A model generated the notes under the pieces. It had not been told where the DNA came from. It worked only from the letters and a program-made list of their open reading frames with translations, and made no database searches. This document shows, one piece after another, positions 32,875 to 46,467 of a stretch of 64,000 nucleotides of DNA. Position numbers and translations under genes: made by a program. Where the stretch lies: the IMG/VR virus record IMGVR_UViG_3300035703_000005, positions 62,001-126,000 of that record, one strand, 5' to 3'. Numbering within the stretch: the stretch's first letter is position 1; each line of letters starts with the position of its first letter.

Positions 32875-33443
32875 CAGACAATAGTAATTTCGTGTGCATT
32901 TCCAAAGTTGACGATACCAGTTCCACTCATATGAGCAATATCAGTAACATCAAACTTTTCTTCAGGAATTTCATCCCACATTAGTTGAATATCAGGCCAA
33001 TCTGGACCAATATCATCATGGATCATGATACCCTTCCAACCTTTTTCCCTCAACCAATCCATCATGACACGTTCTTGAGAACCATCATGAGGATCAACAT
33101 CAATCATAACGATTGAAACATTATCCCAATCAATCTCTTCATCTTCCATGAAGTCTTGGATTTTCCAAGTAATATTATCTTTTTGAATAGAACTTGCACC
33201 TTGTTCTACCAAATCATAACTGATGACTTGGTTATTTGGATTATAAGAAAGTGCAAGAGCGGACCCACCAGTACGAGTACCAATATCCAAAATAGTAGTT
33301 TTATTGAAAAACGTAGAAAGATAAGCATAAAGTCTATACTCACTTTGTCCAGCAGGAAGCCAGTCATTGTCATTAAGAGAAATATCCCTTAAATGACCAA
33401 CATCCAAATTTTTTACATGATCCTTAATAATTTCAATTTTCAT
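32874..33443 (-). CDS. class I SAM-dependent methyltransferase; start approximate
   Basis: ILDIGTRTGGS, IDVDPH, HDD, GTG. Confidence 0.75.
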   Translation of the reverse strand: MKIEIIKDHVKNLDVGHLRDISLNDNDWLPAGQSEYRLYAYLSTFFNKTTILDIGTRTGGSALALSYNPNNQVISYDLVEQGASSIQKDNITWKIQDFMEDEEIDWDNVSIVMIDVDPHDGSQERVMMDWLREKGWKGIMIHDDIGPDWPDIQLMWDEIPEEKFDVTDIAHMSGTGIVNFGNAHEITIV

Positions 33444-34494
33444 TATTCTTCTTAGCAATTTGTTCAGAAATCCATGCGTATGTCTTACGAATACCCTCTT
33501 CAAGTGTTTGAGAATAATCCCAACCGAGTTCTCTGCGGACTACATCATTATTAGAGTTGCGTCCACGAACACCAAGAGGAGCGTCTAATTTATGTTGTTT
33601 AGTAACAGTCTTACCAGAAACTTTTGCAGCAGTTTCAACAAGTTGGTTAATGGTAACCATTTCTTCAGATCCAATATTCACAGGACCAATGAAATTAGAA
33701 TCCATCATACGACGAGTTGCTTCAATGCACTCATCAATGTAAAGGAATGAACGAGTTTGTTTTCCGTCACCCCAAACTTCAATAGTACCACCTTGTTCTG
33801 GAAGATAAGCTACTTTACGACAGATTGCTGCGGGAGCTTTTTCACGACCACCTTCCCAGGTTCCTTCGGGGCCAAAGATATTATGATAACGAGATACACG
33901 CACAGGTATGCCGTAATTCCTATGATATGCGAAGTATAGTCTTTCAGAAAAAAGTTTTTCCCAACCATATTCCGAATCTGGGTTGGCAGGGTAAGCAGAT
34001 TCTTCACGGCAATCAGGATTATCGGGATCTAGTTGATTATGTTCTGGATACATGCAAGCAGATCCAGAATAGAAAATTCTAGTTTTATTTACTCCTTTGG
34101 ACTCATTAAGTTGTCTCTGAGCCTCAAGAACATTTAAGTTAATGGTTACGGAATTGTGCATGATATCTGCATCATTCTCACCAGTGAAAACAAATCCTGC
34201 ACCACCCATATCAGCGGCGAATTGATAAATCTCATCAAATGTATCAATATATTGATATGGTACAGAATTATAAAAATTTGCGTATGGTCCTTTGTATTGA
34301 AGGACTCTTTCTACGAAATGAAGATCTCTCAAATCTCCTTGAATGAATTCATGAGCTTCTGTGGGAGAAAATTCAGGTCTTTTAAGATCTACACCACGAA
34401 CCCAATATCCTTCAGATCGCAGTCTCTTTACCATATGACTTCCGATAAAGCCACCTGCACCGAGAACAAGTGCAGTCTTAACGTATTGACTCAT
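33433..34494 (-). CDS. GDP-mannose 3',5'-epimerase-like SDR
   Basis: GAGGFIGSH, AADMGG, SACMYP, YGWEK, GGREKAPAAICRK, GVRGRNS. Confidence 0.88.
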   Translation of the reverse strand: MSQYVKTALVLGAGGFIGSHMVKRLRSEGYWVRGVDLKRPEFSPTEAHEFIQGDLRDLHFVERVLQYKGPYANFYNSVPYQYIDTFDEIYQFAADMGGAGFVFTGENDADIMHNSVTINLNVLEAQRQLNESKGVNKTRIFYSGSACMYPEHNQLDPDNPDCREESAYPANPDSEYGWEKLFSERLYFAYHRNYGIPVRVSRYHNIFGPEGTWEGGREKAPAAICRKVAYLPEQGGTIEVWGDGKQTRSFLYIDECIEATRRMMDSNFIGPVNIGSEEMVTINQLVETAAKVSGKTVTKQHKLDAPLGVRGRNSNNDVVRRELGWDYSQTLEEGIRKTYAWISEQIAKKNNEN

Positions 34495-34536
34495 ATTTTG
34501 ATCAAAAATAATAATCTCAATAGTATATATTATACT

Positions 34537-34567
34537 AAAAAAGGTGGGTTTATGCAACCCACCTTTG
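34537..34567 (-). terminator. intrinsic terminator after the wcaG-like RNA
   Basis: AAAGGTGGGTT-loop-AACCCACCTTT followed by a T run. Confidence 0.75.
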
Positions 34568-34571
34568 GTAA

Positions 34572-34645
34572 CTCAGGCTCGCCACTTGTTTTGAGTACGA
34601 GAAAACAAGAAACTCGGCGGGGTTTCCCCATCCACACCAGTCGGC
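34572..34645 (-). ncRNA. wcaG RNA motif-like element
   Basis: Two UGGYG motifs (CUGGUGUGG; GUGGCGAG), GGGG-AAA-CCCC and CUUGUUUU/AAAACAAG stems, upstream of a sugar epimerase. Confidence 0.65.
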
Positions 34646-34696
34646 ATATTTAATGTCCAATCCGACGAGGACAAAATGGGTCATTGACTCCACCAC

Positions 34697-34930
34697 CTAG
34701 TTTGTCTTAACTAGGAAAAGATGGGTTAACTTTGATATTTCGGTGATACCAAAGAATGCACATAAGAATAGTACATCCCAAAGTTTAAGTTTGATAGCAA
34801 AAGGAACTGTAAGAAGACCTCCAATAACTTTAATCATCAAACCGTGTTTAAAATCTCCCCATAACATAGTTTGATAACCAATTACGAGAAGAAGATTCCC
34901 AAGATATCTTAGGATACTTGTCTTTGACAT
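34697..34930 (-). CDS. small membrane protein
   Basis: Three hydrophobic segments. Confidence 0.6.
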   Translation of the reverse strand: MSKTSILRYLGNLLLVIGYQTMLWGDFKHGLMIKVIGGLLTVPFAIKLKLWDVLFLCAFFGITEISKLTHLFLVKTN

Positions 34931-34957
34931 AAGGGGTTTGCTCCCGACCAGTTTTTT

Positions 34958-35452
34958 TTACGACTCTCCATGTCGCTCTAACTTTTTTCTTTTCCAATAT
35001 TCTTTTTTTGCGAGAGATAATTTTAACCTTGTTTCGGAAGAAAAACTTTGGGGGTTTTTCTTTTTTGTTTCTTTTATTTTATTTTTGTGTTCTTCAGTTA
35101 GAGGTTTTCCATAAAATGGATGATTTTTTCCACTTACAGATTCTGATATTTTTCTTTTAGATTCTTCCGAATGTTTTTTACCAGTCCATGAAGGTGGGTT
35201 ATTATATTTTCCACCATCATTTATATTTTCTAATAATCCACCTTCAGATTTTTTTCCAAATAAAAATATCATATATTTTTCATGAATAAATGCTTCTTCT
35301 TCTGTTAAGTTATCTTTAAGAATAAGAATTCTGTCTTTCGGAGGGACAGAAACATTATCATGAACATGGTATGCTCTACGCCCAGTTCCTTTTCCTACGT
35401 AATAGGGAACGTTATTTTTATCAAAATAACAATAAGTATAAAACTTGGACAT
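34958..35452 (-). mobile_element. free-standing GIY-YIG/NUMOD3 homing endonuclease-like gene
   Basis: FYTY..PYYVGKG..RR..H; HSEESKRKIS, HPFYGK; late promoter at 35476-35483. Confidence 0.8.
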
Positions 35453-35497
35453 AACTACCTTACTTAATCTATTAATATTTATAATAGACCAGTGCTG

Positions 35498-35758
35498 TTA
35501 TAGACCATCCGTGTCTTCATCATCTCTAACATAACATGGCACACGATCTGGATCTAACCATTTCGCATACTCAATATCTTCCATTGCAGTAGAACATTGT
35601 AGAACATTATCAAAAAGATAAATGTCATTCCAGCGTTTGGTATAAGGATCTTTTTTCTGCATTCTATAATCAGGCATACCATTAAGTTCAATGATACCCT
35701 TTTGAACAAACCTGTATCCTTCTCGTTCGAGAAGAACTTTAGGAAGTGTTTCAATCAC
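35498..35758 (-). CDS. hypothetical phage protein
   Basis: NGMPDYRMQ...WLDPDRVPCY. Confidence 0.6.
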   Translation of the reverse strand: MIETLPKVLLEREGYRFVQKGIIELNGMPDYRMQKKDPYTKRWNDIYLFDNVLQCSTAMEDIEYAKWLDPDRVPCYVRDDEDTDGL

Positions 35759-35976
35759 GATACAAGAGCTCCTTCGGATTCAAGATCACTATAGATATAT
35801 TCCATAAGAATCTCGTAGTCATCCAAAGGATCTCCAGAAAAAATTACACCATTAGATTCATAAAACCTACGAACTTTTTTATAAAGTTTCGGATTCTTTA
35901 CATCAAGATAAGACTCTCCGTTCGCGGCAGACTTCAGAGTTTGAATGTCTTTTTTGAATTTAGCAGTGAGTGACAT
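35755..35976 (-). CDS. hypothetical phage protein
   Basis: LDVKNPKLYKKV...FSGDPLDDY. Confidence 0.6.
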   Translation of the reverse strand: MSLTAKFKKDIQTLKSAANGESYLDVKNPKLYKKVRRFYESNGVIFSGDPLDDYEILMEYIYSDLESEGALVS

Positions 35977-36053
35977 TTGTTTGAATTTGTTTACCTTGTT
36001 ATTATAGGGGTTAGACTTGAAAAAGTCAAGAAGGACAGTTGTTGAAGTGTCCA

Positions 36054-36126
36054 TGCTCGATGAGAGGATCGAACTCTCCTGGGACCGATTATGAGTCGGG
36101 TGCTTTCACCAGATAGCTAATCGAGC
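36054..36126 (-). tRNA. tRNA with CAT anticodon (probably Ile2)
   Basis: Cloverleaf; CCGA-CTCATAA-TCGG arm. Confidence 0.85.
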
Positions 36127-36127
36127 T

Positions 36128-37240
36128 TTATTCAAATGTCCATTGTGGATGCGATGATGAAGACCAATACCAATATTTTTTGTGTTTTATCCAAGGAAGT
36201 GGGTGACTATAATCACAAATTGGTTCATATAAATTATTAATACCCATTGCATCTGATGTCTGTTTATTTTGATATCCCCTTAGAATATTAATTCTTTTGG
36301 AGTATGTAGATTGGTATGTGCCATAAAATAATTCAGAATTTACACATATTAACTGTTCAATGATTGATTTATCCAATCCCTGATAACAATCATAAAAATC
36401 ACTAAAAAAATAAATGTTTTTATGAGTTCCCAATTTATCAAAAAATTTTAAATCTTTTTCATCAGTAGATATGTATAGAGGTTTATTTTCTTTAAAAAGA
36501 TATTTTATCGAAAATAGTAATTTTTCTGGTGTAGATACTGATGAAATATCTTCAGATTTGAGGTCTAAGAAATCAGTTCTACGAATATGAACAGAATCAT
36601 ATGGGCCCAAAATATCGTATACTTTTTTAGATATATCTAAAAATTTAGAGTCATATAAGAGACAAGAATTTATTTTTTGTTTTAGTTGATTTCGTTTAAA
36701 AGAATTACCGGGATAAATTGAATACCAATATTGTGCAAAAAGATTAGCTTCAAAATGCAAAAATTTTTCATCAAAATTTAAATTTATAATTTCAGTTCTT
36801 TTACCACAAAATTTAGAAAAATCTAAATCACTTTCAATTTGTCCACAAAATAAAACAATTTGAGTATCCGCAAGTCTACAATTTTCAGCAAATGTAATTT
36901 TTTTTAAATCATTAATACAATTTTCTATATTTCCAGTATATGAATATATGCATTCTGAAGTTTCTTTTTTTTCTATCTTAGAAAAAAGTTCTGAAAATTC
37001 AGGAACATCATAAAAATCAATACAATTAAAATTAGAATAAATGGATTCTTTGTTTAAGAATTTCAATATGTCAACAAAATGTTCTTTTCCAAATCCTTCT
37101 GATACATCAAAACACCAAAAATTTGGAGGAATAATTAAGGTTCTTCCTGTTATTTCACTCAAGGCCAAAGCGACCTCTAAACTCATTAATATATTAATTA
37201 GTCCTGCTTGGTGAGTTGAAAATGATATATATTTACTCAT
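36128..37240 (-). CDS. O-fucosyltransferase-like protein
   Basis: AGLIN, VHIRRTDF, YISTDE, EQLIC, GTYQSTYS. Confidence 0.75.
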   Translation of the reverse strand: MSKYISFSTHQAGLINILMSLEVALALSEITGRTLIIPPNFWCFDVSEGFGKEHFVDILKFLNKESIYSNFNCIDFYDVPEFSELFSKIEKKETSECIYSYTGNIENCINDLKKITFAENCRLADTQIVLFCGQIESDLDFSKFCGKRTEIINLNFDEKFLHFEANLFAQYWYSIYPGNSFKRNQLKQKINSCLLYDSKFLDISKKVYDILGPYDSVHIRRTDFLDLKSEDISSVSTPEKLLFSIKYLFKENKPLYISTDEKDLKFFDKLGTHKNIYFFSDFYDCYQGLDKSIIEQLICVNSELFYGTYQSTYSKRINILRGYQNKQTSDAMGINNLYEPICDYSHPLPWIKHKKYWYWSSSSHPQWTFE

Positions 37241-37248
37241 TTAAAAAA

Positions 37249-37419
37249 TTATGGTGCTTCATTATTCAAATCAGTATACATGCATATAAGTTCATCGTCT
37301 ACAGGGATCATTACATAAGTATTTTTTCCGTTAGTTATACCTATATGTTCTCCGTTTTCCACTCTTCCAATCATTTCATCCCAACGTTCTTGAAATTGTT
37401 CCACCGTGTAGATTTCCAT
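37249..37419 (-). CDS. Phd/YefM-like small protein
   Basis: TVEQFQERWDEMIGRVENGEHIGIT..V. Confidence 0.5.
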   Translation of the reverse strand: MEIYTVEQFQERWDEMIGRVENGEHIGITNGKNTYVMIPVDDELICMYTDLNNEAP

Positions 37420-37438
37420 AGTTGTTGTATTTATTAAG

Positions 37439-37512
37439 TCGGAACGATAGGACTTGAACCTACGACTTCCAGCTCCCAAAGCAGGCGCTCTACCAAACTG
37501 AGCTACGTTCCG
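37439..37512 (-). tRNA. tRNA-Pro(TGG)
   Basis: Cloverleaf. Confidence 0.93.
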
Positions 37513-37841
37513 TTTTTCTTTTCATCTTTGGTTGAATGTACATACATTATACCCAATGTAGGAACGACTGTCAACCCCATACCAATGATAAAAATTGATA
37601 TGGGATTATTTAGTACAAATTCCACAAACTTAAATACCAAATTAGTATGTGGTTCCATTCCTTTTATGCAAATATTCCTGGAATATAATTAATTCTTTTA
37701 CTAATTTCATCAAGAATAACACCATATTCTTTGAATCTTCTATCACCTGCGATGAAACGTCGTTGTCTCATCCAAACAGCATCTGCTAAAAGTTTTAGTT
37801 CGTAATCCGAAAAATCTTTGAACCTTTCCATTGAGTAGCTC

Positions 37842-38876
37842 CTATCTAACGTGATGTCCACCGAACATGTATCGCATACCATTTAAAATTTTGGCTGCGA
37901 AAGTGCCCAGATTGCGTGAATTAAATCTTTCATAAAGCGCAGTGGTGATGACAGGAGCGGGAACCCCCAGGTCCACAGCGGCAGTAACTGTCCAGCGACC
38001 CTCACCGCTGTCGGATACACCTCCAGAGAATTGTTTAAGCTCAGTATTGCCGCGTAACACATCAGCAGTAAGATCCAATAACCAAGAACCAACAACGCTA
38101 CCACGACGCCATAACTCAGCCACCTCAGCAACGTCAATATCATAACAGTAACTTTCTGGGTCTGCCATTGGGGCAACCTCTGCATCCCCTTCCCTAACAT
38201 ACTTGGCACCTGCATTGGCATTTTTTAGGATATTGAATCCTTCTGCATATGCTTGCATTATACCATACTCAATTCCATTATGAACCATCTTTACGAAATG
38301 TCCTGCACCAGGTCCGCCACAATGCAACCAGCCATACTCTGCAGAAGTTATGTCTGAGTCAAATTGAGTCCTGGGGGCAGCGTCGATTCCTGGAGAGAGG
38401 GCATTAAAAATACGCGAACAAGTGGCGACTGCAGTATCTCCGCCACCAACCATAAGACAGTATCCACGATCCAAACCATAAACACCGCCGCTAGTGCCGC
38501 AATCAATATATTGGATACCCATCTTTGCCAAACGTTCTGATCTTTTCCTACTGTCTTTAAAATTGCTATTGCCATGATCAATAATAATATCTCCTTCACC
38601 ACAAAATCGTAGTAACTCATTGATAGTCTCCTCTACTGTTTCTGCAGGTACAACCATTTGGAAAATTCCTGGTTGTGTTCCTCCTTTATTATTCTGTTTA
38701 ACTACTTTAACAAGATTTTCAATAGTAGTTGCAACTCCATTAATATATCCCTTTTCATAAGCTTCTTGAGCCTTTTCATAATTTCTCCTATAACCCCAAA
38801 CTTCTATTCCTGATTTCATCATACGACGGGACATTCCTTCTCCCATCCTTCCAAGTCCAATTAATCCTACTTTCAT
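37842..38876 (-). CDS. gnd: 6-phosphogluconate dehydrogenase (short type)
   Basis: GLGRMG, GTSGG, GHFVKMVHNGIEY, DSGEGRW, FGGH. Confidence 0.96.
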   Translation of the reverse strand: MKVGLIGLGRMGEGMSRRMMKSGIEVWGYRRNYEKAQEAYEKGYINGVATTIENLVKVVKQNNKGGTQPGIFQMVVPAETVEETINELLRFCGEGDIIIDHGNSNFKDSRKRSERLAKMGIQYIDCGTSGGVYGLDRGYCLMVGGGDTAVATCSRIFNALSPGIDAAPRTQFDSDITSAEYGWLHCGGPGAGHFVKMVHNGIEYGIMQAYAEGFNILKNANAGAKYVREGDAEVAPMADPESYCYDIDVAEVAELWRRGSVVGSWLLDLTADVLRGNTELKQFSGGVSDSGEGRWTVTAAVDLGVPAPVITTALYERFNSRNLGTFAAKILNGMRYMFGGHHVR

Positions 38877-39079
38877 TCAACCCTCCCAAGATTCGTATTG
38901 TTCTCTAAAATATCTATCAACTTTATTTAAATCATCAAGATGAATATCACACATATAATTATGATCGTCACACCACTGTAAGGCAAATGCGTGAAATCTC
39001 TCTTGTTTTTTTATTGTAGGAACACCATAAGTTCTAGCAAAAGAAGACATTATGAAATGCCAACACATATTTTCTGGTT

Positions 39080-39739
39080 TCATTTTTGATCTTTCATAAC
39101 TTGTTCCCAGTCCTTCTGGAATAACTCAAGACCCTTATCAGTCATAATGTTCTTATACATTGACCAAAATACAATGGGAGGAATTGTAACTACATCTGCA
39201 CCACAAAGAGCAGACTGTTCTACCTGTCTTACATCACGAAGAGATGCTGCAAGAATTTGTGTAGATGTTCCCGAATAATCAAATGCTTTACGAATGTTCT
39301 TAATGAGTTCGATTCCATCAATCGAATTATCCATCCAACGACCAACAAAAGGTGAAATGAATGTTGCTCCTGATTTAGATGCAAGAATTGCCTGAGCGAC
39401 TGAGAATACAAGAGTTACATTGACTTGAATTCCTTTATCAGTCAAAAATTTACAAGCCTTAAGTCCTTCTACTGTACAAGGAACTTTAATTGTAACTGCT
39501 GGTGCAATTGTATAAAATTGTTGTGCTTGTGAAAGCATTTCTTCTGCAGTATCGGCAACAACTTCTGCAGAAATACTTTCTAGTTTTGAAAAAGACTTTG
39601 ATATTTCTTCGATAACTTCATGAAGTTGTCTACCACTTTTAAGAATTAAAGTGGGATTTGTAGTAACTCCATCCAATAGTCCAGTCTCGTATGCTGGACT
39701 AATCATTGAAACATCTGCGGTATCTAAAAAAATCTTCAT
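39080..39739 (-). CDS. talC: transaldolase (TalC/Fsa type)
   Basis: FLDTA, GVTTNPT, IKVP, SPFVGR. Confidence 0.95.
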   Translation of the reverse strand: MKIFLDTADVSMISPAYETGLLDGVTTNPTLILKSGRQLHEVIEEISKSFSKLESISAEVVADTAEEMLSQAQQFYTIAPAVTIKVPCTVEGLKACKFLTDKGIQVNVTLVFSVAQAILASKSGATFISPFVGRWMDNSIDGIELIKNIRKAFDYSGTSTQILAASLRDVRQVEQSALCGADVVTIPPIVFWSMYKNIMTDKGLELFQKDWEQVMKDQK

Positions 39740-40671
39740 ATAGTACTCCTATTGTGGATAAGCGTTATTTAATCCCCAAGTTATAAAAAGCATGATTGAT
39801 CCAAATATACAAATTGTAGAGAAAGTTAGTCTGTGCATCTTACCCCCCACTACCGTTTCTGAAACCTATCATATATCCAATCAATAATCCACACATAAAT
39901 GACACAAACATGTAAAGGACATGAGACGTAAACTCAATAAATTCAATCCATTCTGTATTCTTCATCGTCCTCATAAGTAGATGGTTCTTCAAAAAGTTCA
40001 TCCATTTTTTGTTGTAGAACTCTTTGTTGCAGTTCTTCTAAATCCTCTTCTGTAAGAATTATCATTTGTCCTTAAGTAATTCCTCTATTCGTTTACGCAT
40101 GTTTGTACTTTCTTGTTTCATATAATCTCTGAGAGAATATCCTCTTTGACCTTTCATAATACAAGTTCCTTGATAGAACATTGTAACGGCAAATACCAAT
40201 AATAAAACTATACCAATTATTTCAGAGTAATGTTGAGCCATGGCAGTAAAGGTGGAATGATACCAATTAATCGGAGAAGTCCCTCAGCAAATAAAGCAAG
40301 AACCACCCAACCAACACACATAGAAATAATGGAAGCATTCCTATTGTGCCTTCGTATAGAAGCATCAATCATCTCCTGTACTTCAGAACGACTTACGGAT
40401 TCAGCATTATCAATATCCATTTTTATCATCTCCAAGATATTTCGATAAAGGATCTTTTTTGGTTTTGACAATCTCACACGCTCTTTTATAGAACATATTA
40501 TCCGTATTACCAGAGGCTTCAAAAGTAGCCTTGATCTTCACCCAATTACCGTAGGTGTGGTCGTCCATGAGGTTATTAACTTGTACATAATTATATAATA
40601 ATCACGGAAGCTATAACGTCAACCTTATGTGTTCATATCGTAACACTGATTAAGCAAATATTAAAATAAAA

Positions 40672-40756
40672 CGGAAAGGAGAGGATTCGAACCTCCGGAT
40701 GCTCTCACATCGACTGTTTTCAAGACAGTTGCCTTAAACCACTCGGCCACCTTTCC
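40672..40756 (-). tRNA. tRNA-Ser(TGA)
   Basis: Class II cloverleaf. Confidence 0.93.
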
Positions 40757-40759
40757 ATA

Positions 40760-40848
40760 CGGAGAATGTTGGATTCGAACCAACGGAGAAGCATAAACTC
40801 CTCAAGAACTTAGCAGGTTCCCGCCTTAAACCACTCGGCCAATTCTCC
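40760..40848 (-). tRNA. tRNA-Ser(GCT)
   Basis: Class II cloverleaf. Confidence 0.93.
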
Positions 40849-41099
40849 TATCGGATTTCGAAATCCAGTTTACGAACCTTACGAGCTCGTCTGGACTCCT
40901 GGAAAGCAAGTTCAGATGGACTGAACACACTATCCCTTTTGTTTTCTTTAATTGAGTTTAACATAACTACTTGATTTAAGTCAACAGCAGTGATAGTGTC
41001 TCCTTTTACAAGTGTCATATTATCACACCCACAGCATACCGATTTAGTTGGATGCGACTCCAACTCGGTGTTACACACTTTGCATCTTACTCTTAACAT
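40848..41099 (-). CDS. Zn-binding hypothetical protein
   Basis: CKVC...CGC. Confidence 0.6.
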   Translation of the reverse strand: MLRVRCKVCNTELESHPTKSVCCGCDNMTLVKGDTITAVDLNQVVMLNSIKENKRDSVFSPSELAFQESRRARKVRKLDFEIR

Positions 41100-41115
41100 T
41101 GTCTTATACCTTTAA

Positions 41116-41637
41116 TTAATCTTCAGTTGTTTCTTCTACTTGAATTTCAGATTCTTCTTGTTCTTCAATTTCTTGAACTTCTTCTTTTGCGAGTCCAGGA
41201 GAGGATTCAAGATACGATCTCAACATCCAAACAAATTTTCCATGAGACTCATTTAGATCATCTATAAGATTTGAAGTTGCTCTGGACTTCTGAGCATCAG
41301 CTTCCTCAGCAACTTCAGTAAATAGATCACACAAATCTTGATTTGATTTTAACAGATCTCTTACCATTTTATGGCAATCTGTTGTACTTTGTCCAGTTTT
41401 GACTTTGGAAACTTCTACAATTCTTTCTAAACTATTAAGTGGTTTTACATTTAGAAACCTCATGTGTTCAGAGATACGATCGATCTCCTCAAACATTGTT
41501 TCATACTGATCACCAAAAAGAGTATGAAGTTGTGGAAAATCTTCTCCAATTACATTCCAATGATACGCCCATGTCTTATGAAATAAGACAAATAGGGATG
41601 CTTGTGCATCACTTAGTAGTTTAAAAAGTGTTTCCAT
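41116..41637 (-). CDS. dps: Dps mini-ferritin with an acidic tail
   Basis: HWNV.G.DF..LH..F...Y...D..SE, K.VWML; late promoter at 41658-41665. Confidence 0.92.
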   Translation of the reverse strand: METLFKLLSDAQASLFVLFHKTWAYHWNVIGEDFPQLHTLFGDQYETMFEEIDRISEHMRFLNVKPLNSLERIVEVSKVKTGQSTTDCHKMVRDLLKSNQDLCDLFTEVAEEADAQKSRATSNLIDDLNESHGKFVWMLRSYLESSPGLAKEEVQEIEEQEESEIQVEETTED

Positions 41638-41667
41638 TATACAGATACTTTTTCAAGTATTTATAAG

Positions 41668-41739
41668 TGGGCAATATCGGATTCGAACCAATGACCAACT
41701 GCGTGTAAAGCAGCTGCGCTACCGCTGCGCTAATCGCCC
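41668..41739 (-). tRNA. tRNA-Val(TAC)
   Basis: Cloverleaf. Confidence 0.93.
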
Positions 41740-41740
41740 G

Positions 41741-41948
41741 TGGGGGTGGTGAGATTCTGTCATACTCACAATCGGGAAGGTTACACTGACAACGTATTTC
41801 CCAACACTTAGGTTCTTCTTGGTGAGAAGTTCTATACCTTTGATTTCTCAACGATACAGCGGGCACCACCCCTAACCTATTACATTATCCCGTGAGTAAC
41901 CACAAGGATTGTTCTGTCACACCCAGAGAACTCCCGTCGAAGTTCTCA
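41741..41948 (-). ncRNA. multi-stem structured RNA, possibly the manA motif
   Basis: GGGGUGGUG/CACCACCCC closing stem, internal stems, repeated UGACAGAA, ACUCAC/GUGAGU complement. Confidence 0.55.
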
Positions 41949-41950
41949 AG

Positions 41951-42022
41951 AGCGGAATACCGGATTCGAACCGGTGACATCCAACTTGGAAGGATGGCGT
42001 TCTACCACTGAACTAATTCCGC
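41951..42022 (-). tRNA. tRNA-Gly(TCC)
   Basis: Cloverleaf, U73. Confidence 0.93.
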
Positions 42023-42061
42023 AATAAGACAATTATAGAGTAGTTGAGTATAATTGTCAAG

Positions 42062-42144
42062 TGCTCCAGAGAAGATTTGAACTTCCACGCTTTTTAAGGC
42101 GGCGGATTCTAAGTCCGCTGTGTCTACCGTTCCACCACTGGAGC
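42062..42144 (-). tRNA. tRNA-Leu(TAG)
   Basis: Class II cloverleaf. Confidence 0.93.
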
Positions 42145-42262
42145 TAATTTTTAATTGATGAGTAGTGAGTGCCCACCACTCGCAGAAGACACTTTCTGCA
42201 ATTTTCACTGCATTAGAGGGCAGTGATGATATGAAAGAATCGGAAATTTCCAACCCTTCCAA

Positions 42263-42335
42263 CTCCCCCAGTCCGACTCGAACGAACAACCCCAGAGTTA
42301 ACAGCTCCGTGCTCTGCCAATTGAGCTATAGGGGA
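42263..42335 (-). tRNA. tRNA-Asn(GTT)
   Basis: Cloverleaf, U1-A72. Confidence 0.9.
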
Positions 42336-42386
42336 ATATAGGGGAAAGGAGAGCTCTTGGGCGAACCCGCAGGATCACTTTCCCAG

Positions 42387-42459
42387 TGGAGAATAGGAGA
42401 CTCGAACTCCTAACCTTTGCCTTGCAAAGGCACTGCTCTACCAATTGAGCTAATCCCCC
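42387..42459 (-). tRNA. tRNA-Ala(TGC)
   Basis: Cloverleaf with G3.U70. Confidence 0.94.
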
Positions 42460-42462
42460 ATT

Positions 42463-42537
42463 TGGTGGCGGGGGGTGGAATTGAACCACCTACCTGAAGC
42501 TTATGAGACTTCTGTGCAACCGTTACACTTCCCCACT
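42463..42537 (-). tRNA. tRNA-Met(CAT), initiator-like
   Basis: A1xC72 mismatch, encoded CCA. Confidence 0.85.
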
Positions 42538-42540
42538 ATA

Positions 42541-42776
42541 AGGCCGCTTTTCACGGCACCGTAACACTTTCTTTACAGGGCTGTTATCACCCCGTCTCTC
42601 TATACTAGGGCAGTAGTCTTACTGCGAGAGAATGCAACAATGTTGTTTGCGTTTGTTTTTTGTCCCGTCAACAGATACAACCTTACCACCTCGTCGAAAC
42701 CTTGGCAACCCCTAGTTATGGAGTTGTGGGGAGTCGAACCCCAGTCCGAAGCAACAGACTTTGCATCCTCTTGAAC
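42541..42776 (-). ncRNA. ssrA: two-piece (circularly permuted) tmRNA
   Basis: Acceptor piece ends GGACTGGGGTTCGACTCCCCACAACTCCA at 42719; 6-nt spacer; coding piece starts GGGGTTG...GGTTTCGAC at 42712; tag ANNIVAFSRSKTTALV* at 42600-42650. Confidence 0.92.
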
Positions 42777-42783
42777 ATAGTAT

Positions 42784-42812
42784 ATAGTATACTAAAATTA
42801 TTCAGTTGTCAA
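42784..42812 (-). promoter_or_regulatory. sigma70-type promoter of the tmRNA
   Basis: TTGACA-N17-TACTAT. Confidence 0.7.
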
Positions 42813-42813
42813 G

Positions 42814-42900
42814 CGGAGAGAGAGGGATTTGAACCCTCGGTGAAGTTACCCCCACACAGACTTTCCAGGTCTGCTCCTTAAGCCACTCGGACACCTCTCC
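42814..42900 (-). tRNA. tRNA-Ser(GGA)
   Basis: Class II cloverleaf. Confidence 0.93.
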
Positions 42901-42937
42901 AACATAAACATCATACCATAATTACGGAAGATGTCAA

Positions 42938-43011
42938 CACTCTCTGCAGGATTTGAACCTGCGACACATCGGTTCGTAGCCGATTGCTCTAGTCCACTGA
43001 GCTAAGAGAGT
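42938..43011 (-). tRNA. tRNA-Arg(ACG)
   Basis: Cloverleaf. Confidence 0.93.
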
Positions 43012-43014
43012 AGG

Positions 43015-43086
43015 CGAAGGGCCAGAGACTTGAACTCTGATCTTTGGTTTTGGAGACCAAGATGCTACCAATTGCACCAACCCAAC
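43015..43086 (-). tRNA. tRNA-Trp(CCA) with two U.U acceptor-stem mismatches
   Basis: Intact D, anticodon and T arms; acceptor GTTGGGT/GCCCTTC. Confidence 0.75.
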
Positions 43087-43087
43087 A

Positions 43088-43164
43088 TGGTATCCGTGAG
43101 AGGATTTGAACCTCCAACAAATAGATCCTTAGTCTATTGCCTCTTCCAATTGGGCTACACGGAC
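43088..43164 (-). tRNA. tRNA-Leu(AAG) with a short variable loop
   Basis: ATAGA-CTAAGGA-TCTAT; A73; encoded CCA. Confidence 0.8.
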
Positions 43165-43167
43165 AAA

Positions 43168-43839
43168 CTATAAGATTCCGAAAAGTTTACATCTTTTACG
43201 AATAGCATTATCAGAAACTCCAAACATTTTACCAATAGAAACTAAAGAATAAGAAGCAAGAAGTTTTTGAAGTTCTTCTTTAGATACTTCAAATTTTCTT
43301 TTTCTTGGAATTGAAATTCTAGGTTTTTTAACCCTTTTTACATTCCTACCAGCAAATGTATCAGTTTGACTATTGCAGTTTGGACATAAAAATCTTAGAT
43401 TTTCTAATCTATTATCATTAGGAATTCCATTTATATGATCTAAAACCATAGATAAAGGATTTCCATTCCATTTAGGTTCCAATCCACAATTGAAGCAAGA
43501 ATAAGAAATAATATTTTCTTGTATTAGTCTTGCCCTAATAACACTCCTAGAAGTGCTACTATTTTCAACAAATAGTATATTATTTGGAATTTTATTTTTA
43601 CTAGGACCAAATTTTTTTCCTTTATTGGAATCAAGTCCTTTTTTTATATGAGAAGTATCAATTTTTTCATATTCTATTCTTCTTTTTAGTGTGTTTATAT
43701 TAGAACCTTGAGAAAATATATTAAGTTTTCTCAAAATCTCAGAATAAGAAGAACTATCAGAAACAATTAATTCTAGTTGTTTTTTTGGAACAGACCATAA
43801 GATACTTCTTTTTTTTCTGGATTTATTTTGATTTGACAT
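43168..43839 (-). mobile_element. free-standing HNH endonuclease inside the tRNA array
   Basis: CFNC...LDHINGIPNDNRLENLRFLCPNC; late promoter at 43860-43867. Confidence 0.9.
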
Positions 43840-43911
43840 AGTAATTATTCTTTATTAGTTATTTATAACACATAAAGTCAAAAAATACTAGTCTTACCAT
43901 TATAAATCCAA

Positions 43912-43986
43912 ATCCCAAGGCAGGCTTCGAACCTGCAAAAATTCTCCTTCAAAGGGAGATAGCTTTACCAGTTTGCTCACTTGGGA
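43912..43986 (-). tRNA. tRNA-Gln(TTG)
   Basis: TCTCC-CTTTGAA-GGAGA; U1-A72. Confidence 0.85.
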
Positions 43987-43992
43987 ATTAGG

Positions 43993-44068
43993 AGTTCAGG
44001 GTGGGATTTGAACCCACGGTGAAAGAAGTTTTGCAGACTTCCGCATTCGACCACTCTGCCACCTGAAC
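43993..44068 (-). tRNA. tRNA-Cys(GCA)
   Basis: Cloverleaf, U73. Confidence 0.9.
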
Positions 44069-44101
44069 ATTTGAACTATCTGGAATTTCCAGATAATTGA
44101 G

Positions 44102-44172
44102 AGCCCAATAACAGAATTGAACTGTTCTCTGCAGTTTACTAAACTGCTGCATCACCACAATGCTTATCGGGC
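44102..44172 (-). tRNA. tRNA-Thr(AGT)
   Basis: GCAGT-TTAGTAA-ACTGC. Confidence 0.85.
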
Positions 44173-44174
44173 GG

Positions 44175-44246
44175 GGTGCCATATGAGATTTGAACTCATC
44201 TACCCAGTTTCACAAACTGGTTCCTTAACCACTAGGATAATGGCAC
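44175..44246 (-). tRNA. tRNA-His(GTG)
   Basis: CCAGT-TTGTGAA-ACTGG. Confidence 0.88.
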
Positions 44247-44247
44247 A

Positions 44248-44319
44248 AGGCAGTGGGTAGAATTGAACTACCGACATAGAGGGTATGAATCTCTTGTTCT
44301 ACCACTGAACTACACTGCC
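44248..44319 (-). tRNA. tRNA-Met(CAT), elongator-like
   Basis: Cloverleaf, loop TTCATAC. Confidence 0.85.
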
Positions 44320-44323
44320 AAGT

Positions 44324-44413
44324 AGGGAGAGGGTGGAATCGAACCACCATTGCCAATGGACGGAATCGAACCGTCTCTGATACCGTCGTATCCACCATCC
44401 AAGGTGCTCTCCC
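44324..44413 (-). ncRNA. tRNA-like RNA with two T-arms and no 7-nt anticodon loop
   Basis: GGGAGAG/CTCTCCC stem; GACGG-TTCGATT-CCGTC and GGTGG-TTCGATT-CCACC. Confidence 0.7.
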
Positions 44414-44426
44414 ATATCGTAGGTGT

Positions 44427-44509
44427 ATCATTTGAGAGGATTCGAACCTCCATTGCCGCCTCCAAAACGCAAGTGCTATGGCGGAGTGTTACCGTTACAC
44501 TACAAATGA
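44427..44509 (-). ncRNA. tRNA-like RNA (Gln-like body) with a 19-nt anticodon loop
   Basis: Intact acceptor, D and T arms; CCGCC-N19-GGCGG. Confidence 0.7.
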
Positions 44510-44725
44510 TATCCTTACGTTGCTTACTCCTAGATTCTACTCATCAGATTTACTTGTTGGACCTAATCGTTGGAATACTCGCTGCGTTCAACTTATTACC
44601 CTGTCTCGACTTGAACGAGACTGTTTTCTATAGCCTTTGCGTTTGTTAGTAATAAGCATACTGACAGGTTTCTTTTACCTTTCAGTTTTCCGTTCAACCC
44701 AACTTTGGAATAAAGTTTGGGCAAG

Positions 44726-44797
44726 TGGAACCGACAAGATTTGAACTTGTGACCGCTCGGTTATCAGCCGAGTGCTCTACCACTGAGCTACGATTCC
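44726..44797 (-). tRNA. tRNA-Ile(GAT)
   Basis: Cloverleaf. Confidence 0.93.
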
Positions 44798-44917
44798 ATC
44801 AAGGTAGGAGTCGATATCAACAACCTACCAGTTTCAGTTTTCGGACTGAAAAACCTATCACTAACCAACCGAAGTTTCATAACGGAGAAAGTGAATCTCC
44901 GTGACCATAAGGTCAAG

Positions 44918-44991
44918 AGGGAACAATCGGATTTGAACCGATAACACCATGATCTTCAATCATGTGCTCTACCAATTGGAGCTATGTTCCC
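44918..44991 (-). tRNA. tRNA-Phe(GAA)
   Basis: Cloverleaf. Confidence 0.92.
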
Positions 44992-44994
44992 AAG

Positions 44995-45068
44995 TCCAGA
45001 TGAAAGGATTTGAACCTCCGACTTCTCCGCCCCAAACGGAGCGCTCTACCAAACTGAGCTACACCTGG
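44995..45068 (-). tRNA. tRNA-Pro(TGG), second divergent copy
   Basis: CTCCG-TTTGGGG-CGGAG. Confidence 0.9.
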
Positions 45069-45069
45069 A

Positions 45070-45144
45070 TGGTAGTCCTAACGGGATTTGAACCCGTGTC
45101 TTCACTGTGAAAGAGTGATGTCCTCACCACTAGACGATAGGACC
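45070..45144 (-). tRNA. tRNA-Glu(TTC)
   Basis: Cloverleaf with encoded CCA. Confidence 0.93.
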
Positions 45145-45323
45145 AGATGGGAGGGGTATCCCACACGAAGTTACTTACGGATTACGCTTCGTAGCCTTAT
45201 GAATCCTGCCATCATCCGATGGTGGCTAGAAATCCCTCCCCAATTCCAGTTATTACTACAACATTCTTCTGCAAACTGGCAACCTCTGAAGAATGCGTGG
45301 AGATTCGTACTGATGATCTCCAA

Positions 45324-45397
45324 CGACCCATAGGGGATTTGAACCCCTGATCTCCTCTTGGACAGAGAGGCGCGTTAGACCGCTACGCTAATGGGCC
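45324..45397 (-). tRNA. tRNA-Asp(GTC)
   Basis: Cloverleaf, G73. Confidence 0.92.
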
Positions 45398-45444
45398 AAG
45401 AGCACAATCCACTACCAATGGTATCATTGGGCAGATCATGCAGT

Positions 45445-45534
45445 GAGAGAGGAGGGAATTGAACCCCCGATGGTTCTTATGTACGTGTTTTACAGACACG
45501 GACTACACATATTGCCGACAGTAGCCACTCTCCC
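45445..45534 (-). tRNA. tRNA-Tyr(GTA) with an enlarged D arm
   Basis: CGTGT-CTGTAAA-ACACG; long variable region. Confidence 0.8.
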
Positions 45535-45929
45535 TAGATTTTATACTGCAAATAATTTTCACCAAGATTGATTGAGTTTTTATTATCTTTTATGATGTCT
45601 TTGGGAATAAGATACTTATCACCATCAGCAGTTAGTATGAATAACTGGTCATAAAAGATTTCAGTATTGAGTTTATTGACAAAATTAGATTTACTATTTC
45701 CACCAGTAATCCTCAATCCCACTACATATTTTCCACTAGAAGATTTGGAGTTAGTTGTCTTTACTTGTATTTTTTGTAATCCAAGTTCAGGAAACTCAAC
45801 AATCAAATCGTAATCTTGACTATCTGTTAATGGGATAGAAACAGTATATCCAAGACCACAAAAGTGGGCAATACAAATACCCAATCCAACATCACCTTGT
45901 TTCTTGGTGTTTTTGCAGTTATGGAACAT
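45534..45929 (-). mobile_element. free-standing PD-(D/E)XK endonuclease (group I intron-associated type)
   Basis: KKQGD.G...VSIPLTD...YDLIV...KIQVKT; late promoter at 45955-45962. Confidence 0.85.
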
Positions 45930-45978
45930 ATCTTATAACGGAGTAATACTCTGTTATTTATAAGAGTTATGTTCCATA

Positions 45979-46051
45979 TGGGTCTGGTGGGACTCGAACC
46001 CACGATATACTGGTTAAAAGCCAGGTGCATTAGCCGCTATGCAACAGACCC
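45979..46051 (-). tRNA. tRNA-Lys(TTT)
   Basis: Cloverleaf. Confidence 0.92.
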
Positions 46052-46239
46052 AAATAATATAGGATAAATATTCGGTTGTCTAGGTTCGGTGTGGTCTCTC
46101 TCAACCACTCGATTAGAATACCACCATTTGAACTCTGATTGGAGGATGGTGGACACTTGGGAAACTGTCACAAGCAACAAAAAAGGGGAGGAAACTTTTG
46201 GTTTCTCTCCCCTTCTTTTGCTTTTATGGATTAAACATC

Positions 46240-46341: not shown

Positions 46342-46394
46342 TGTTTTCGACCTAAGTGTTTTTATTTATAAGACTTTTTTGTTAAAAAGTCAAG

Positions 46395-46467
46395 CACCCC
46401 TGGTAGGATTTGCACCCACGACCAACGGCTTAGAAGGCCGATGCTCTATCTACTGAGCTACAGGGGC
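46395..46467 (-). tRNA. tRNA-Arg(TCT)
   Basis: Cloverleaf; T loop TGCAAAT. Confidence 0.9.

What the first reader, a model, noticed from the sequence alone, without database searches (positions are those of the whole stretch)
34572..35517. Four copies of a gene-junction element ending in the wcaG-like RNA
Seen on the - strand: hairpin, stop codon, then (C/G)UGGU(C/G), then a second hairpin. Copy 1: AGAC-ACGGAUG-GUCU AUAACAGC ACUGGUC (35487-35517). Copy 2: CGAC-AUGGAGA-GUCG UAAAAAAA ACUGGUC GGG..CCC (34932-34977). Copy 3: CUAGU..ACUAG GUGGUGG (34678-34714). Copy 4: GUCC-..CGGAUU-GGAC AUUAA..ACUGGUGUGG (34632-34672). Copies 1-3 overlap the stop codons of three consecutive genes, and three loops carry GGA. 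The endonuclease cassette begins right after ACUGGUC of copy 1 and ends with its own copy. Inference: multivalent protein-binding RNA sites (CsrA-like GGA loops, wcaG UGGYG) or cassette recombination junctions.
Basis: partly seen in the sequence, partly recalled or inferred. Interest (0 to 1): 0.6.

Follow-up and report, generated by a model that had tools for sequence, protein, structure and literature searches.

The report
Modular wcaG RNA array with endonuclease
The four repeats are real, conserved building blocks of a longer-than-annotated cyanophage "wcaG" structured RNA; small genes sit between the blocks, and one is a homing endonuclease that brings its own spare half-block.

Summary
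The window is part of a 249-kb freshwater cyanomyovirus. On the minus strand, one early operon ends in five related RNA modules. Each has a helix, then UGG(U/C)(G/C), usually then a G-rich/C-rich helix.

- **Copy 4** is the 5' half of the Rfam wcaG RNA (60.2 bits).
- **Copies 1 and 2** belong to one small-hairpin family. A covariance model built without the window finds only these two in 64 kb.
- **Copy 3** is a separate 7-bp-hairpin module found in dozens of viral contigs.

Helices covary, and G·U outnumbers A·C 103 to 12, so these are RNA elements.

In 177 related arrays, the wcaG core halves are never separated. The other junctions are either compact or hold one gene-sized insert, from at least eight ORF families.

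The GIY-YIG endonuclease cassette sits after UGGUC in 15 contigs. It always ends with its own hairpin plus ACUGGUC, which rebuilds the downstream module.

CsrA is absent from the phage and from 201 host-family genomes.

Function is untested. I favour repeated sites for an unknown RNA-binding factor.

The parts
36001..36029 (-). Sigma-70-like promoter (TTGACT, 17 nt, TATAAT), the likely start of the early transcription unit that carries the array
   Evidence: 11 of 12 consensus positions. Consensus match only; promoter-like hits in the region were no more frequent than in shuffles (6 found, 7.0 expected), so this is an inference.
35755..35976 (-). phrog_552-family small gene of unknown function. 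The listed ORF runs to 36054, but the family match starts at residue 27, downstream of the promoter.
35498..35758 (-). phrog_481-family gene (86 aa, unknown function). It is the usual upstream neighbour of the array, and its last codons and stop lie inside copy 1.
   Evidence: E 3.3e-40; 460 phage records
35487..35516 (-). Copy 1: resident small-hairpin (type II) half-module. It has helix AGAC/GUCU, loop ACGGAUG, a 10-nt A-rich linker and UGGUC. The endonuclease insertion has cut it off from its second helix.
   Evidence: model R1 38.8 bits. The stem covaries AGAC/GUCU with AGUC/GACU in 106 of 106 cases, with 0 mispaired combinations found.
34946..35486 (-). Homing endonuclease cassette (541 nt). 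It holds a late-promoter-like TATAAATA (35476-35483), a GIY-YIG/NUMOD3 ORF (34958-35452) and its own half-module at the 3' end.
   Evidence: The same boundaries occur in 14 other contigs. The endonuclease-free junction is seen in relatives and in public DNA and RNA libraries.
34933..34975 (-). Copy 2: the endonuclease-borne hairpin, linker and UGGUC (34946-34975) joined to the resident second helix (34933-34945). That helix holds the GGAG ribosome-binding site of the next gene.
   Evidence: Model R1 51.5 bits, E 4.5e-15
34697..34930 (-). phrog_2318-family gene for a 77-aa hydrophobic, probably membrane, protein (judged from the sequence, no prediction run). It is the commonest insert between the first and second modules, and its 3' end runs into copy 3.
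   Evidence: It is absent in S-SZBM1 and other compact arrays.
34678..34715 (-). Copy 3: module X, a 7-bp hairpin directly followed by UGGUGGAG and a small GUC/GAC helix
   Evidence: 90.6% of cells paired, with CG/UA and AU/GC exchanges and G·U pairs.
34571..34674 (-). Rfam wcaG RNA core (modules 4 and 5). Copy 4 is its 5' half: pseudoknot helix GUCC/GGAC 34655-34672, P1 GUCGG/CCGAC, UGGUG 34635-34639 and P2 to 34616. The 3' half has P3 34585-34609 and UGGCG 34580-34584.
   Evidence: (60.2 bits, gathering score 42)
34529..34566 (-). Intrinsic terminator hairpin with U-tract (34540-34566). It has a -35-like word in its loop and a TATAAT (34529-34534) 17 nt downstream, so it is a composite terminator/promoter separating the RNA from the epimerase gene.
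   Evidence: 154 of 175 related wcaG cores have such a terminator about 20 nt downstream, and 113 then have TAtAAT.
33433..34494 (-). NAD-dependent nucleotide-sugar epimerase/dehydratase (the 'wcaG' gene)
   Evidence: (PF01370, 2.8e-38)

Best explanation
Shown:
- The region is one extended, modular structured RNA of the wcaG family, encoded on the minus strand at the 3' end of an early operon.
- It consists of five modules of common design: a helix, a conserved single-stranded UGG(U/C)(G/C), and usually a second helix that is G-rich on one side and C-rich on the other.
- Rfam's 98-nt wcaG model covers only the last two modules. These always stay together.
- The upstream modules (copies 1/2 and copy 3) are separable units. 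The gaps between them are preferred sites for small ORFs.
- One insert is a free-standing GIY-YIG homing endonuclease. It enters exactly between UGGUC and the second helix of a small-hairpin module.
- The endonuclease cassette has a late-promoter-like box at its 5' end and a replacement hairpin-linker-UGGUC at its 3' end. The module in front of the downstream gene is therefore rebuilt.

Inferred:
- Each module is a binding site for the same trans-acting factor, most likely a protein that is not CsrA.
- Binding sets the fate of the transcript and the translation of the embedded ORFs. The ribosome-binding site of the 77-aa gene lies in the 5' arm of the second helix, 2-3 nt before its AUG.
- The stop codons inside the modules are a by-product: upstream ORFs run on until they reach the A/U-rich linker.
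For: Family membership and homology:
- Rfam wcaG match at 34571-34674.
- The wcaG model also scores a copy-1-type module plus a wcaG 3' half above its threshold in S-BM3 and Syn1.
- Model R1, built without the window, hits only copies 1 and 2 in the window. It hits twice in the whole genome and once in each of four other phage genomes, always at the wcaG array.

Architecture:
- The order E1, X, W5, W3 recurs across more than 100 contigs, with spacings of about 66, 53 and 55 nt.

RNA-level structure:
- Compensatory changes occur in all helices.
- G·U outnumbers A·C 103 to 12 on this strand.

Inserts:
- At least eight ORF families sit between modules.
- Junction lengths are bimodal: 195 are 90 nt or shorter, 133 are longer than 180 nt, and none lie between.
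- The W5-W3 gap is always 51-62 nt.

Endonuclease:
- 14 relatives plus the window share the cassette boundaries in several different contexts.
- The endonuclease-borne ACUGGUC is intact in 14 of 14 cassettes.
- The resident UGGUC has changed in 6 of 15.
- Endonuclease-free junctions occur in the same public DNA and RNA libraries.

Ribosome-binding site: in the relatives inspected it lies in the second helix, 2-3 nt before the AUG.
Against: - No binding factor has been identified.
- The conserved upstream protein phrog_481 has no recognisable RNA-binding fold.
- Transcription is shown only as contigs in metatranscriptome libraries, which can contain DNA.
- The set of arrays was gathered with patterns taken from the modules themselves. 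Frequencies are therefore biased towards arrays that have them.
- The wcaG core has pseudoknots and an invariant two-half arrangement, as expected of a ligand-binding fold. A small-molecule sensor is not excluded for that part.
- Module order is sometimes inverted, with X before E1.
Confidence: 0.6

Rival explanations
1. Small-molecule riboswitch reading. The wcaG core is an aptamer that controls the terminator just downstream. The upstream modules are degenerate or accessory duplicates of its 5' half, with no function of their own.
For: - wcaG was proposed as a riboswitch candidate (PMC2864571).
- The core has three covarying helices and a well-supported pseudoknot.
- The two halves are never separated.
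- A terminator follows in 154 of 175 cores.
Against: - Orphan 5' half-modules are strongly conserved on their own, with compensatory changes. They also occur without any wcaG core.
- The terminator does not visibly overlap the conserved RNA; the gap is about 20 nt.
- The terminator is followed by a promoter-like -10 box, so the sugar gene may not be in the same regulated transcript.
- Copy number varies from 2 to 5 or more.
Confidence: 0.15
2. RNA-processing or stability punctuation. The modules are sites for a host or phage ribonuclease, or protective structures, that cut the early polycistronic RNA into separately stable pieces. Each has a hairpin followed by an A/U-rich single strand.
For: - The modules sit exactly at cistron boundaries.
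- The small-hairpin type has an A-rich 10-13-nt single-stranded linker next to a helix.
- The array lies at the 3' end of the operon, before a terminator.
Against: - The strict conservation of UGGUS and of the loop GG goes beyond what generic RNase E-type sites need.
- No read-end data are available. Only contigs could be laid, and they show no ends.
Confidence: 0.15
3. Purely DNA-level recombination sites. On this reading the repeats are PeSL-like shuffling junctions or endonuclease targets, kept alike by gene conversion, with no RNA role.
For: - Gene content varies at the junctions.
- A homing endonuclease targets one of them.
- T4-type phages are known to shuffle genes at composite promoter/terminator repeats (PMC2839356, PMC4122927).
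Against: - Stems change by paired substitutions rather than staying identical.
- G·U is tolerated but A·C is not.
- All copies have the orientation of the genes.
- The modules at different positions (E1, X, W5) are too unlike for homologous exchange.
- The modules contain neither promoter nor terminator.
Confidence: 0.07
4. CsrA/Rsm-type sponge. Hairpin loops presenting GGA titrate a CsrA-family protein.
For: - The small-hairpin loops are 7 nt long with a central GG, mostly GGA (ACGGAUG, AUGGAGA). From my own knowledge, this resembles CsrA/RsmE sites.
- There are several copies, and the array ends in a terminator.
Against: - PF02599 was not found in the phage genome.
- It was not found in 201 genomes of the family of the closest psbA donor, a Cyanobium. 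The same search rings in E. coli, B. subtilis and T. maritima.
- The 7-bp-hairpin modules have no GGA loop.
Confidence: 0.03

Closest known systems
wcaG RNA motif (Rfam RF01761; Weinberg et al. 2010, PMC2864571)
   Same: - The last 104 nt of the array match the family at 60.2 bits.
- It has the same phage group, the same neighbourhood of nucleotide-sugar genes and the same three helices.
- Copy-1-type modules can stand in for its 5' half and still score above threshold.
   Different: - The described motif is a single 98-nt element taken as a 5'-UTR regulator.
- Here it is the end of an array of up to five modules, with ORFs between them.
- It is followed by a terminator plus a promoter-like box rather than directly by the gene.
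- It was not found in 151 host-family genomes.
- The upstream modules are not in the model and are not mentioned in the papers I could search.
PeSL composite promoter/terminator cassettes of T4-type phages (Arbiol et al. 2010, PMC2839356; Comeau et al. 2014, PMC4122927)
   Same: - Short conserved elements lie at gene boundaries of a variable region, and gene presence and absence coincide with them.
- The terminator/promoter at 34529-34566 has this composite build.
   Different: - The modules themselves hold neither promoter nor terminator.
- They keep a fixed order rather than being interchangeable repeats.
- They evolve by compensatory base-pair changes, as RNA structures do.
Free-standing homing endonucleases of T4-like phages (seg and mob genes; e.g. 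mobE, PMC2790892)
   Same: - It is an intergenic GIY-YIG/NUMOD3 gene with its own late-type promoter box.
- It is present or absent at one exact site among close relatives.
- The site is a highly conserved sequence.
   Different: - The cassette carries a diverged copy of the 5' half of its own target, about 67% identical over 30 nt by my own ungapped position-by-position comparison of the two copies.
- That copy keeps the RNA hairpin and ACUGGUC, so the interrupted RNA module is rebuilt downstream.
- The resident half then decays in some lineages.
CsrB/RsmZ-type decoy RNAs
   Same: Repeated short hairpins present GGA in the loop, and the array ends in an intrinsic terminator.
   Different: - No CsrA-family protein was found in the phage or in the sampled hosts.
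- The invariant element is the single-stranded UGGUS after the hairpin, not the loop.
- The modules are interleaved with coding genes.
Tandem riboswitch or tandem aptamer arrangements
   Same: Related structured units lie in series on one transcript. Syn1 has two consecutive wcaG matches: 45.1 bits, and 40.9 bits which is just under the gathering score of 42.
   Different: The units here are half-modules that occur alone and are separated by ORFs. No ligand is known.

Membership tests
wcaG RNA (RF01761) | Covariance-model score at or above the gathering score (42 bits) | tested here: met
   34571-34674 scores 60.2 bits. This covers copy 4 and the fifth module only.
wcaG RNA (RF01761) | Copies 1-3 match the model on their own | tested here: not met
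   No wcaG hit at E up to 10 was found over 34675-35800. However, the same kind of module fused to a wcaG 3' half scores 49.5 bits in S-BM3 and 45.1 bits in Syn1. Copies 1 and 2 are therefore relatives of the 5' half, not full members.
wcaG RNA (RF01761) | Helices P1, P2 and P3 supported by covariation | tested here: met
   P1 has 5 of 5 and P3 6 of 7 pairs with changes on both sides. A linker/P3-loop pseudoknot shows six compensatory combinations.
wcaG RNA (RF01761) | Position in the 5' UTR of the regulated gene | tested here: inconclusive
   The RNA lies upstream of the epimerase gene. A terminator, then a -35/-10-like pair, lies between them. No transcript ends are available.
Small-hairpin (type II) module family defined here (model R1) | 4-bp helix, 7-nt loop with central GG, 10-13-nt A-rich linker, UGGU(C/G), then the second helix | tested here: met
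   Copy 2 scores 51.5 bits and copy 1 38.8 bits. Copy 3 scores 8.0 bits, and copy 4 is not found.
CsrA/Rsm decoy RNA | GGA presented in hairpin loops, in several copies | tested here: met
   The loops of copies 1, 2 and 4 contain GGA.
CsrA/Rsm decoy RNA | A CsrA-family protein in the phage or host | tested here: not met
   PF02599 gave 0 hits in the phage and 0 of 201 host-family genomes, with controls positive.
PeSL cassette | Composite early promoter plus stem-loop terminator within the repeat | tested here: not met
   The modules have no U-tract terminator and no -35/-10 pair. Only the element at 34529-34566 after the array has that build.
Free-standing GIY-YIG homing endonuclease | GIY-YIG catalytic domain and DNA-binding modules | tested here: inconclusive
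   NUMOD3 scores 50 bits, above its cut-off. The GIY-YIG Pfam model scores only 20.8 bits against a cut-off of 27. PHROG homing-endonuclease families match at 4.4e-13. The N-terminal YYVGKG..R motif is visible.
Free-standing GIY-YIG homing endonuclease | Presence/absence polymorphism at one precise site among relatives | tested here: met
Free-standing GIY-YIG homing endonuclease | Site-specific cleavage of the endonuclease-free allele and gene conversion | not testable with these tools
   Needs enzyme assays or co-infection crosses.
Riboswitch | Direct, specific binding of a metabolite that changes an expression platform | not testable with these tools
   No ligand is known. The terminator is adjacent to the conserved RNA but does not overlap it.

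The most novel reading that the evidence does not exclude
wcaG is not a single 5'-UTR riboswitch. It is the terminal unit of a phage-specific, multivalent RNA scaffold built from half-modules, each of which binds an unknown factor. A homing endonuclease has adapted to live inside this RNA by carrying a working replacement half-module. That would be an RNA-level counterpart of the way introns and inteins hide their insertion from selection.
Probability: 0.3. Interest if true: 0.75.

Novelty: new variant of a known kind. Interest (0 to 1): 0.6.

Why it matters
wcaG has been an orphan riboswitch candidate since 2010, with no ligand and no tested function. Four results here change which experiments make sense:
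- Its 5' half exists as an independent, strongly conserved unit.
- Such units are strung along an early operon with genes between them.
- The array ends at a terminator followed by a promoter-like box.
- The family was not found in sampled host genomes.

Together these point to searching for a protein or RNA partner of the UGGUS junction as well as for a metabolite. They also give cultured phages in which to do it: S-SZBM1, S-SRM01, Syn1, S-B43 and S-BM3.

The endonuclease is a clean natural experiment. Its replacement copy keeps the hairpin and ACUGGUC, while the orphaned resident copy decays. This marks which parts of the module are under selection.

The result also shows that short annotated ORFs over these arrays in isolate genomes are probably RNA, not protein. 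An example is the 30-codon ORF in Syn1.

Tried and rejected
- **Word counts.** ACTGGTC and STGGTS alone do not exceed chance usefully. I used the composite pattern and conservation instead.
- **Loose hairpin scan.** A scan for any 6-bp hairpin followed by UGGYS in the genome was unspecific: 41 found against 19 expected, with no further convincing modules.
- **RNAalifold on the 65-sequence alignment.** It missed the copy-3 hairpin because of alignment gaps. I tested that helix by naming it.
- **Pseudoknot columns.** My first columns (helices 3 and 6) were out of register for most rows. I recounted directly.
- **phrog_481 as the binding partner.**
  - No PDB sequence match.
  - The AlphaFold model (pLDDT 81.5, four strands and two helices) has no significant Foldseek hit.
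  - The best VIA-align Z is 4.8, within noise.
  - Weak PC4/Pur-alpha-like rows were not pursued.
- **CsrA.** Absent from the phage and from sampled hosts.
- **wcaG in hosts.** None in 151 genomes. That run's control set also had none; the positive control is the phage itself.
- **Promoter reading of copy 1.** The TATAA in its linker varies among relatives (TTAAA, TCTAA, TGAAA), so I dropped it.
- **Loop-linker pairing.** I found no consistent pairing between the small-hairpin loop and the linker, although loop and linker variants are correlated.
- **Metatranscriptome contigs.** They cover the region but cannot prove transcription or show ends.
  - Read laying was given 1,701 letters.
  - The large protein searches were not used.
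  - No other genetic code was needed.
Full report
**Setting**

The window is bases 62001-126000 of a 248,835-bp virus record. Several features mark it as a T4-like cyanomyovirus:
- 28 tRNA genes and a tmRNA gene.
- Rfam matches to manA, PhotoRC-II and wcaG RNAs.
- Closest DNA matches to Synechococcus phages.

Its psbA is 94% identical to that of a freshwater Cyanobium. Public runs that hold the stretch are mostly lake and river metagenomes.

All genes around the finding lie on the minus strand. In order they are:
- a phrog_552 gene;
- a phrog_481 gene (35498-35758);
- a GIY-YIG/NUMOD3 endonuclease (34958-35452);
- a 77-aa hydrophobic protein of phrog_2318 (34697-34930);
- the Rfam wcaG RNA (34571-34674, 60.2 bits against a gathering score of 42);
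- an intrinsic terminator (34540-34566);
- a nucleotide-sugar epimerase (33433-34494).

**The observation**

The three stop codons do fall inside copies 1-3.

The short words are not informative. ACTGGTC occurs 8 times against 4.8 expected, and the degenerate hexamer is frequent because of glycine codons.

The composite is informative. I defined it as a 4-bp Watson-Crick stem, a 7-nt loop with central GGA, a 4-16-nt linker, and then UGG(U/C)(G/C). It occurs three times in the whole genome against 0.82 expected. Two of those are copies 1 and 2, with identical 10-nt linkers.

**Conservation**

- The core of copy 3 is found in 51 contigs, at least two of them chance matches in unrelated GC-rich DNA.
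- In phage S-SZBM1 the same 34 nt follow the phrog_481 gene. There is no endonuclease and no 77-aa gene, and copy 3 and wcaG follow at once.
- In S-SRM01 the element is followed by the 77-aa gene, then copy 3, then wcaG.
- In S-CAM7, copies 3 and 4 are recognisable with changed but still complementary stems.

**Architecture**

I name the modules as follows:
- E1: the copy 1 type.
- X: copy 3, ending UGGUGGAG.
- W5: the wcaG 5' half, UGGUGCGGAUG.
- W3: the wcaG 3' half, UGGCG.

The order E1, X, W5, W3 recurs across the fetched contigs. Spacings are about 66, 53 and 55 nt when no gene intervenes. Rfam's model covers W5 and W3 only.

Modules come in two builds:
- **Type I** is a 7-bp hairpin, with a loop ending in A's, directly followed by UGGYG. 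Copy 3, W3 and most W5 are of this type.
- **Type II** is a 4-5-bp hairpin with a 7-nt loop carrying GG, an A-rich linker of 10-13 nt, then UGGUS. Copies 1 and 2 are of this type.

Either build can occupy the X or the W5 position.

The window's copy 4 is a pseudoknotted variant. Both helices change together in other contigs, to GUCUC/GAGAC with GCAGG/CCUGC.

Copy-1-type modules are homologous to the wcaG 5' half. The Rfam wcaG model aligns E1 plus a type I hairpin as a full wcaG in S-BM3 (49.5 bits) and Syn1 (45.1 bits).

**RNA, not DNA**

On a 65-sequence alignment, the named helices are 90.6% paired, against 41-59% when partners are slid by 1-3 columns. There are 332 cells changed on both sides, and 0 of 500 shuffles reach the observed score.

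The copy-3 helix shows CG/UA (19), AU/GC (13) and GC/AU (5) exchanges.

For the type II stem I scanned all of IMG/VR with the third stem base forced away from A and its partner left free.
- All 106 distinct hits had U paired with A.
- The converse pattern, A with a partner other than U, had no hit at all.
- Other compensated stems also exist: CGAC/GUCG, UGUC/GACA and CGUC/GACG.

In the four wcaG-array helices, G·U cells number 103 and A·C cells 12. Most of the A·C cells come from misaligned rows. Pairing is therefore selected on the strand of the genes.

A pseudoknot between the P2-P3 linker and the P3 loop is supported by six compensatory word pairs.

**Covariance model**

I built model R1 from 76 type II modules of other contigs and ran it over the window with filters off.
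- Copy 2 scored 51.5 bits (E 4.5e-15) and copy 1 scored 38.8 bits (E 5.5e-11).
- The next hit scored 8.5 bits, and copy 3 scored 8.0 bits.
- The whole genome has just these two hits. Four isolate genomes have one each, at their wcaG arrays.
- DSL-LC02 has three in tandem.

**Genes between modules**

In 177 distinct arrays the W5-W3 spacing is always 51-62 nt. The other junctions are bimodal: 195 are 90 nt or shorter, 133 are longer than 180 nt, and none lie between.

The inserts belong to at least eight unrelated ORF families:
- the 77-aa hydrophobic protein;
- a 65-aa ORF (of helical, coiled-coil-like look by eye);
- the endonuclease;
- a 65-70-aa family;
- a further, unrelated 65-aa ORF;
- a 236-242-aa protein;
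- 49- and 50-aa ORFs;
- a 119-aa ORF.

E1 also follows different upstream genes: phrog_481, phrog_552, a tryptophan halogenase in Syn1, and a sugar isomerase in S-B43.

X occurs alone, followed by a gene or by a terminator.

The set was collected with module-derived patterns, so these proportions describe arrays that have the modules, not all wcaG RNAs.

**The endonuclease cassette**

Fourteen IMG/VR contigs encode a relative at 75% identity or more. All share the following:
- The cassette starts directly after the UGGUC of a resident type II module.
- It opens with a TATAAATA box, which from my own knowledge is the T4 late-promoter word.
- It ends with a hairpin (loop AUGGAGA), an A-run and ACUGGUC, joined to the resident second helix.

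The resident hairpins and the downstream contexts differ among contigs, so the 3' copy travels with the endonuclease.

The endonuclease-borne ACUGGUC is intact in all 14 cassettes with data, counting the window. The resident UGGUC has changed in 6 of 15, to UAGUU, UGGUU or UGCUU. This fits loss of function of the orphaned half and retention of the rebuilt module.

The window's resident copy is still consensus, which suggests a recent arrival.

In public libraries, contigs that match the window down to 35487 continue directly with the second-helix sequence. This is the endonuclease-free allele. It occurs in the same two metatranscriptome runs and one DNA run that also hold endonuclease-containing contigs.

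More distant relatives (42-45% identity) sit behind ordinary terminators, not in modules.

**End of the array**

A terminator-like hairpin lies about 20 nt after W3 in 154 of 175 distinct cores. In 113 of those it is followed within 30 nt by TAtAAT, often with TTGACA in the terminator loop.

This is the composite build described as PeSL in T4-type phages. It puts the wcaG RNA at the 3' end of the upstream unit. A promoter-like site lies at 36001-36029. The sugar genes may therefore have their own promoter.

**Function**

None of this shows what the modules do.

I favour repeated binding sites for one factor, for these reasons:
- The same junction, helix-UGGUS-helix, is repeated 2 to 5 or more times.
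- Two different hairpin builds are accepted at one position.
- Genes can separate the modules without loss of the modules.
- The second helix of E1 holds the GGAG of the 77-aa gene, 2-3 nt before its AUG.

Other results bear on the alternatives:
- CsrA is excluded as the factor, as far as absence can show: 0 hits in the phage and 0 of 201 host-family genomes, with positive controls.
- wcaG was not found in 151 host-family genomes, so the system looks phage-specific.
- The indivisible, pseudoknotted W5-W3 core could still be a metabolite sensor.
- phrog_481, the constant neighbour, gave no fold match.

**Novelty**

The papers that I could search describe wcaG only as a 98-nt candidate cis-regulator. 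I found no mention of upstream modules, interleaved ORFs, or an endonuclease targeted to them.

I rate this a new variant of a known kind.

Noticed in passing
window 34529-34566 (-): The terminator after the wcaG RNA has a -35-like word in its loop and a TATAAT 17 nt further on. This composite terminator/promoter, as in PeSL elements of T4-type phages, recurs after most related wcaG cores.
   Followed up: partly
window 34585-34616 (-), and related loci: The four bases between P2 and P3 of wcaG pair with the first bases of the P3 loop. Six compensatory word pairs support this (CUGG/CCAG, CGAG/CUCG, CUAG/CUAG, CCAG/CUGG, CCUG/CAGG, CAGG/CCUG). I could not check whether Rfam annotates this pseudoknot.
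   Followed up: partly
window 36054-46467 (-): ARAGORN lists 28 tRNA genes plus a cyanobacterial-type permuted tmRNA (Rfam 42543-42798, 105.8 bits; ARAGORN 42509-42808). A manA RNA (41739-41946) sits between two tRNA genes. One ARAGORN call (44425-44510) has an odd two-base anticodon.
   Followed up: no
window 16733-16830 (-) and 15695-16693 (-): A PhotoRC-II RNA (82.1 bits) lies directly upstream of psbA. The psbA protein is 94% identical to that of a freshwater Cyanobium genome.
   Followed up: partly
window 35755-36054 (-): The longest ORF of the phrog_552 gene overlaps a strong sigma-70-like promoter match (36001-36029), and the family match begins at residue 27. The true start is probably the ATG at 35976.
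   Followed up: no
L310:934-1023 (Syn1) and L312:889-978 (S-BM3): In both isolate records a 30-codon 'hypothetical protein' is annotated over the wcaG-type module array. It is more likely RNA than a gene.
   Followed up: no
L004:2950-3030 (ACG-2014f): This phage has the phrog_481 and 77-aa genes side by side but no Rfam wcaG hit. After the 77-aa gene there is only a short UGGCG-containing stretch and a terminator, perhaps a remnant of the array.
   Followed up: no
L035, L046, L076, and L312:849-950: In a few contigs, and in S-BM3, the order is inverted: module X comes before the E1-type module. The order of the upstream modules is therefore not absolute.
   Followed up: partly
window 21700-23900 (-): There is a dense run of CTGGTG/GTGGTG words at 3-nt phase, which suggests a glycine-rich, collagen-like repeat protein.
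   Followed up: no
window 35506-35512 (-): The word CACGG (CNNNG) lies 23-27 bp upstream of the endonuclease insertion point. From memory, I-TevI cuts at such a motif about that far from its insertion site. This is a lead only. The endonuclease-borne copy has CATGG, which is also CNNNG.
   Followed up: no
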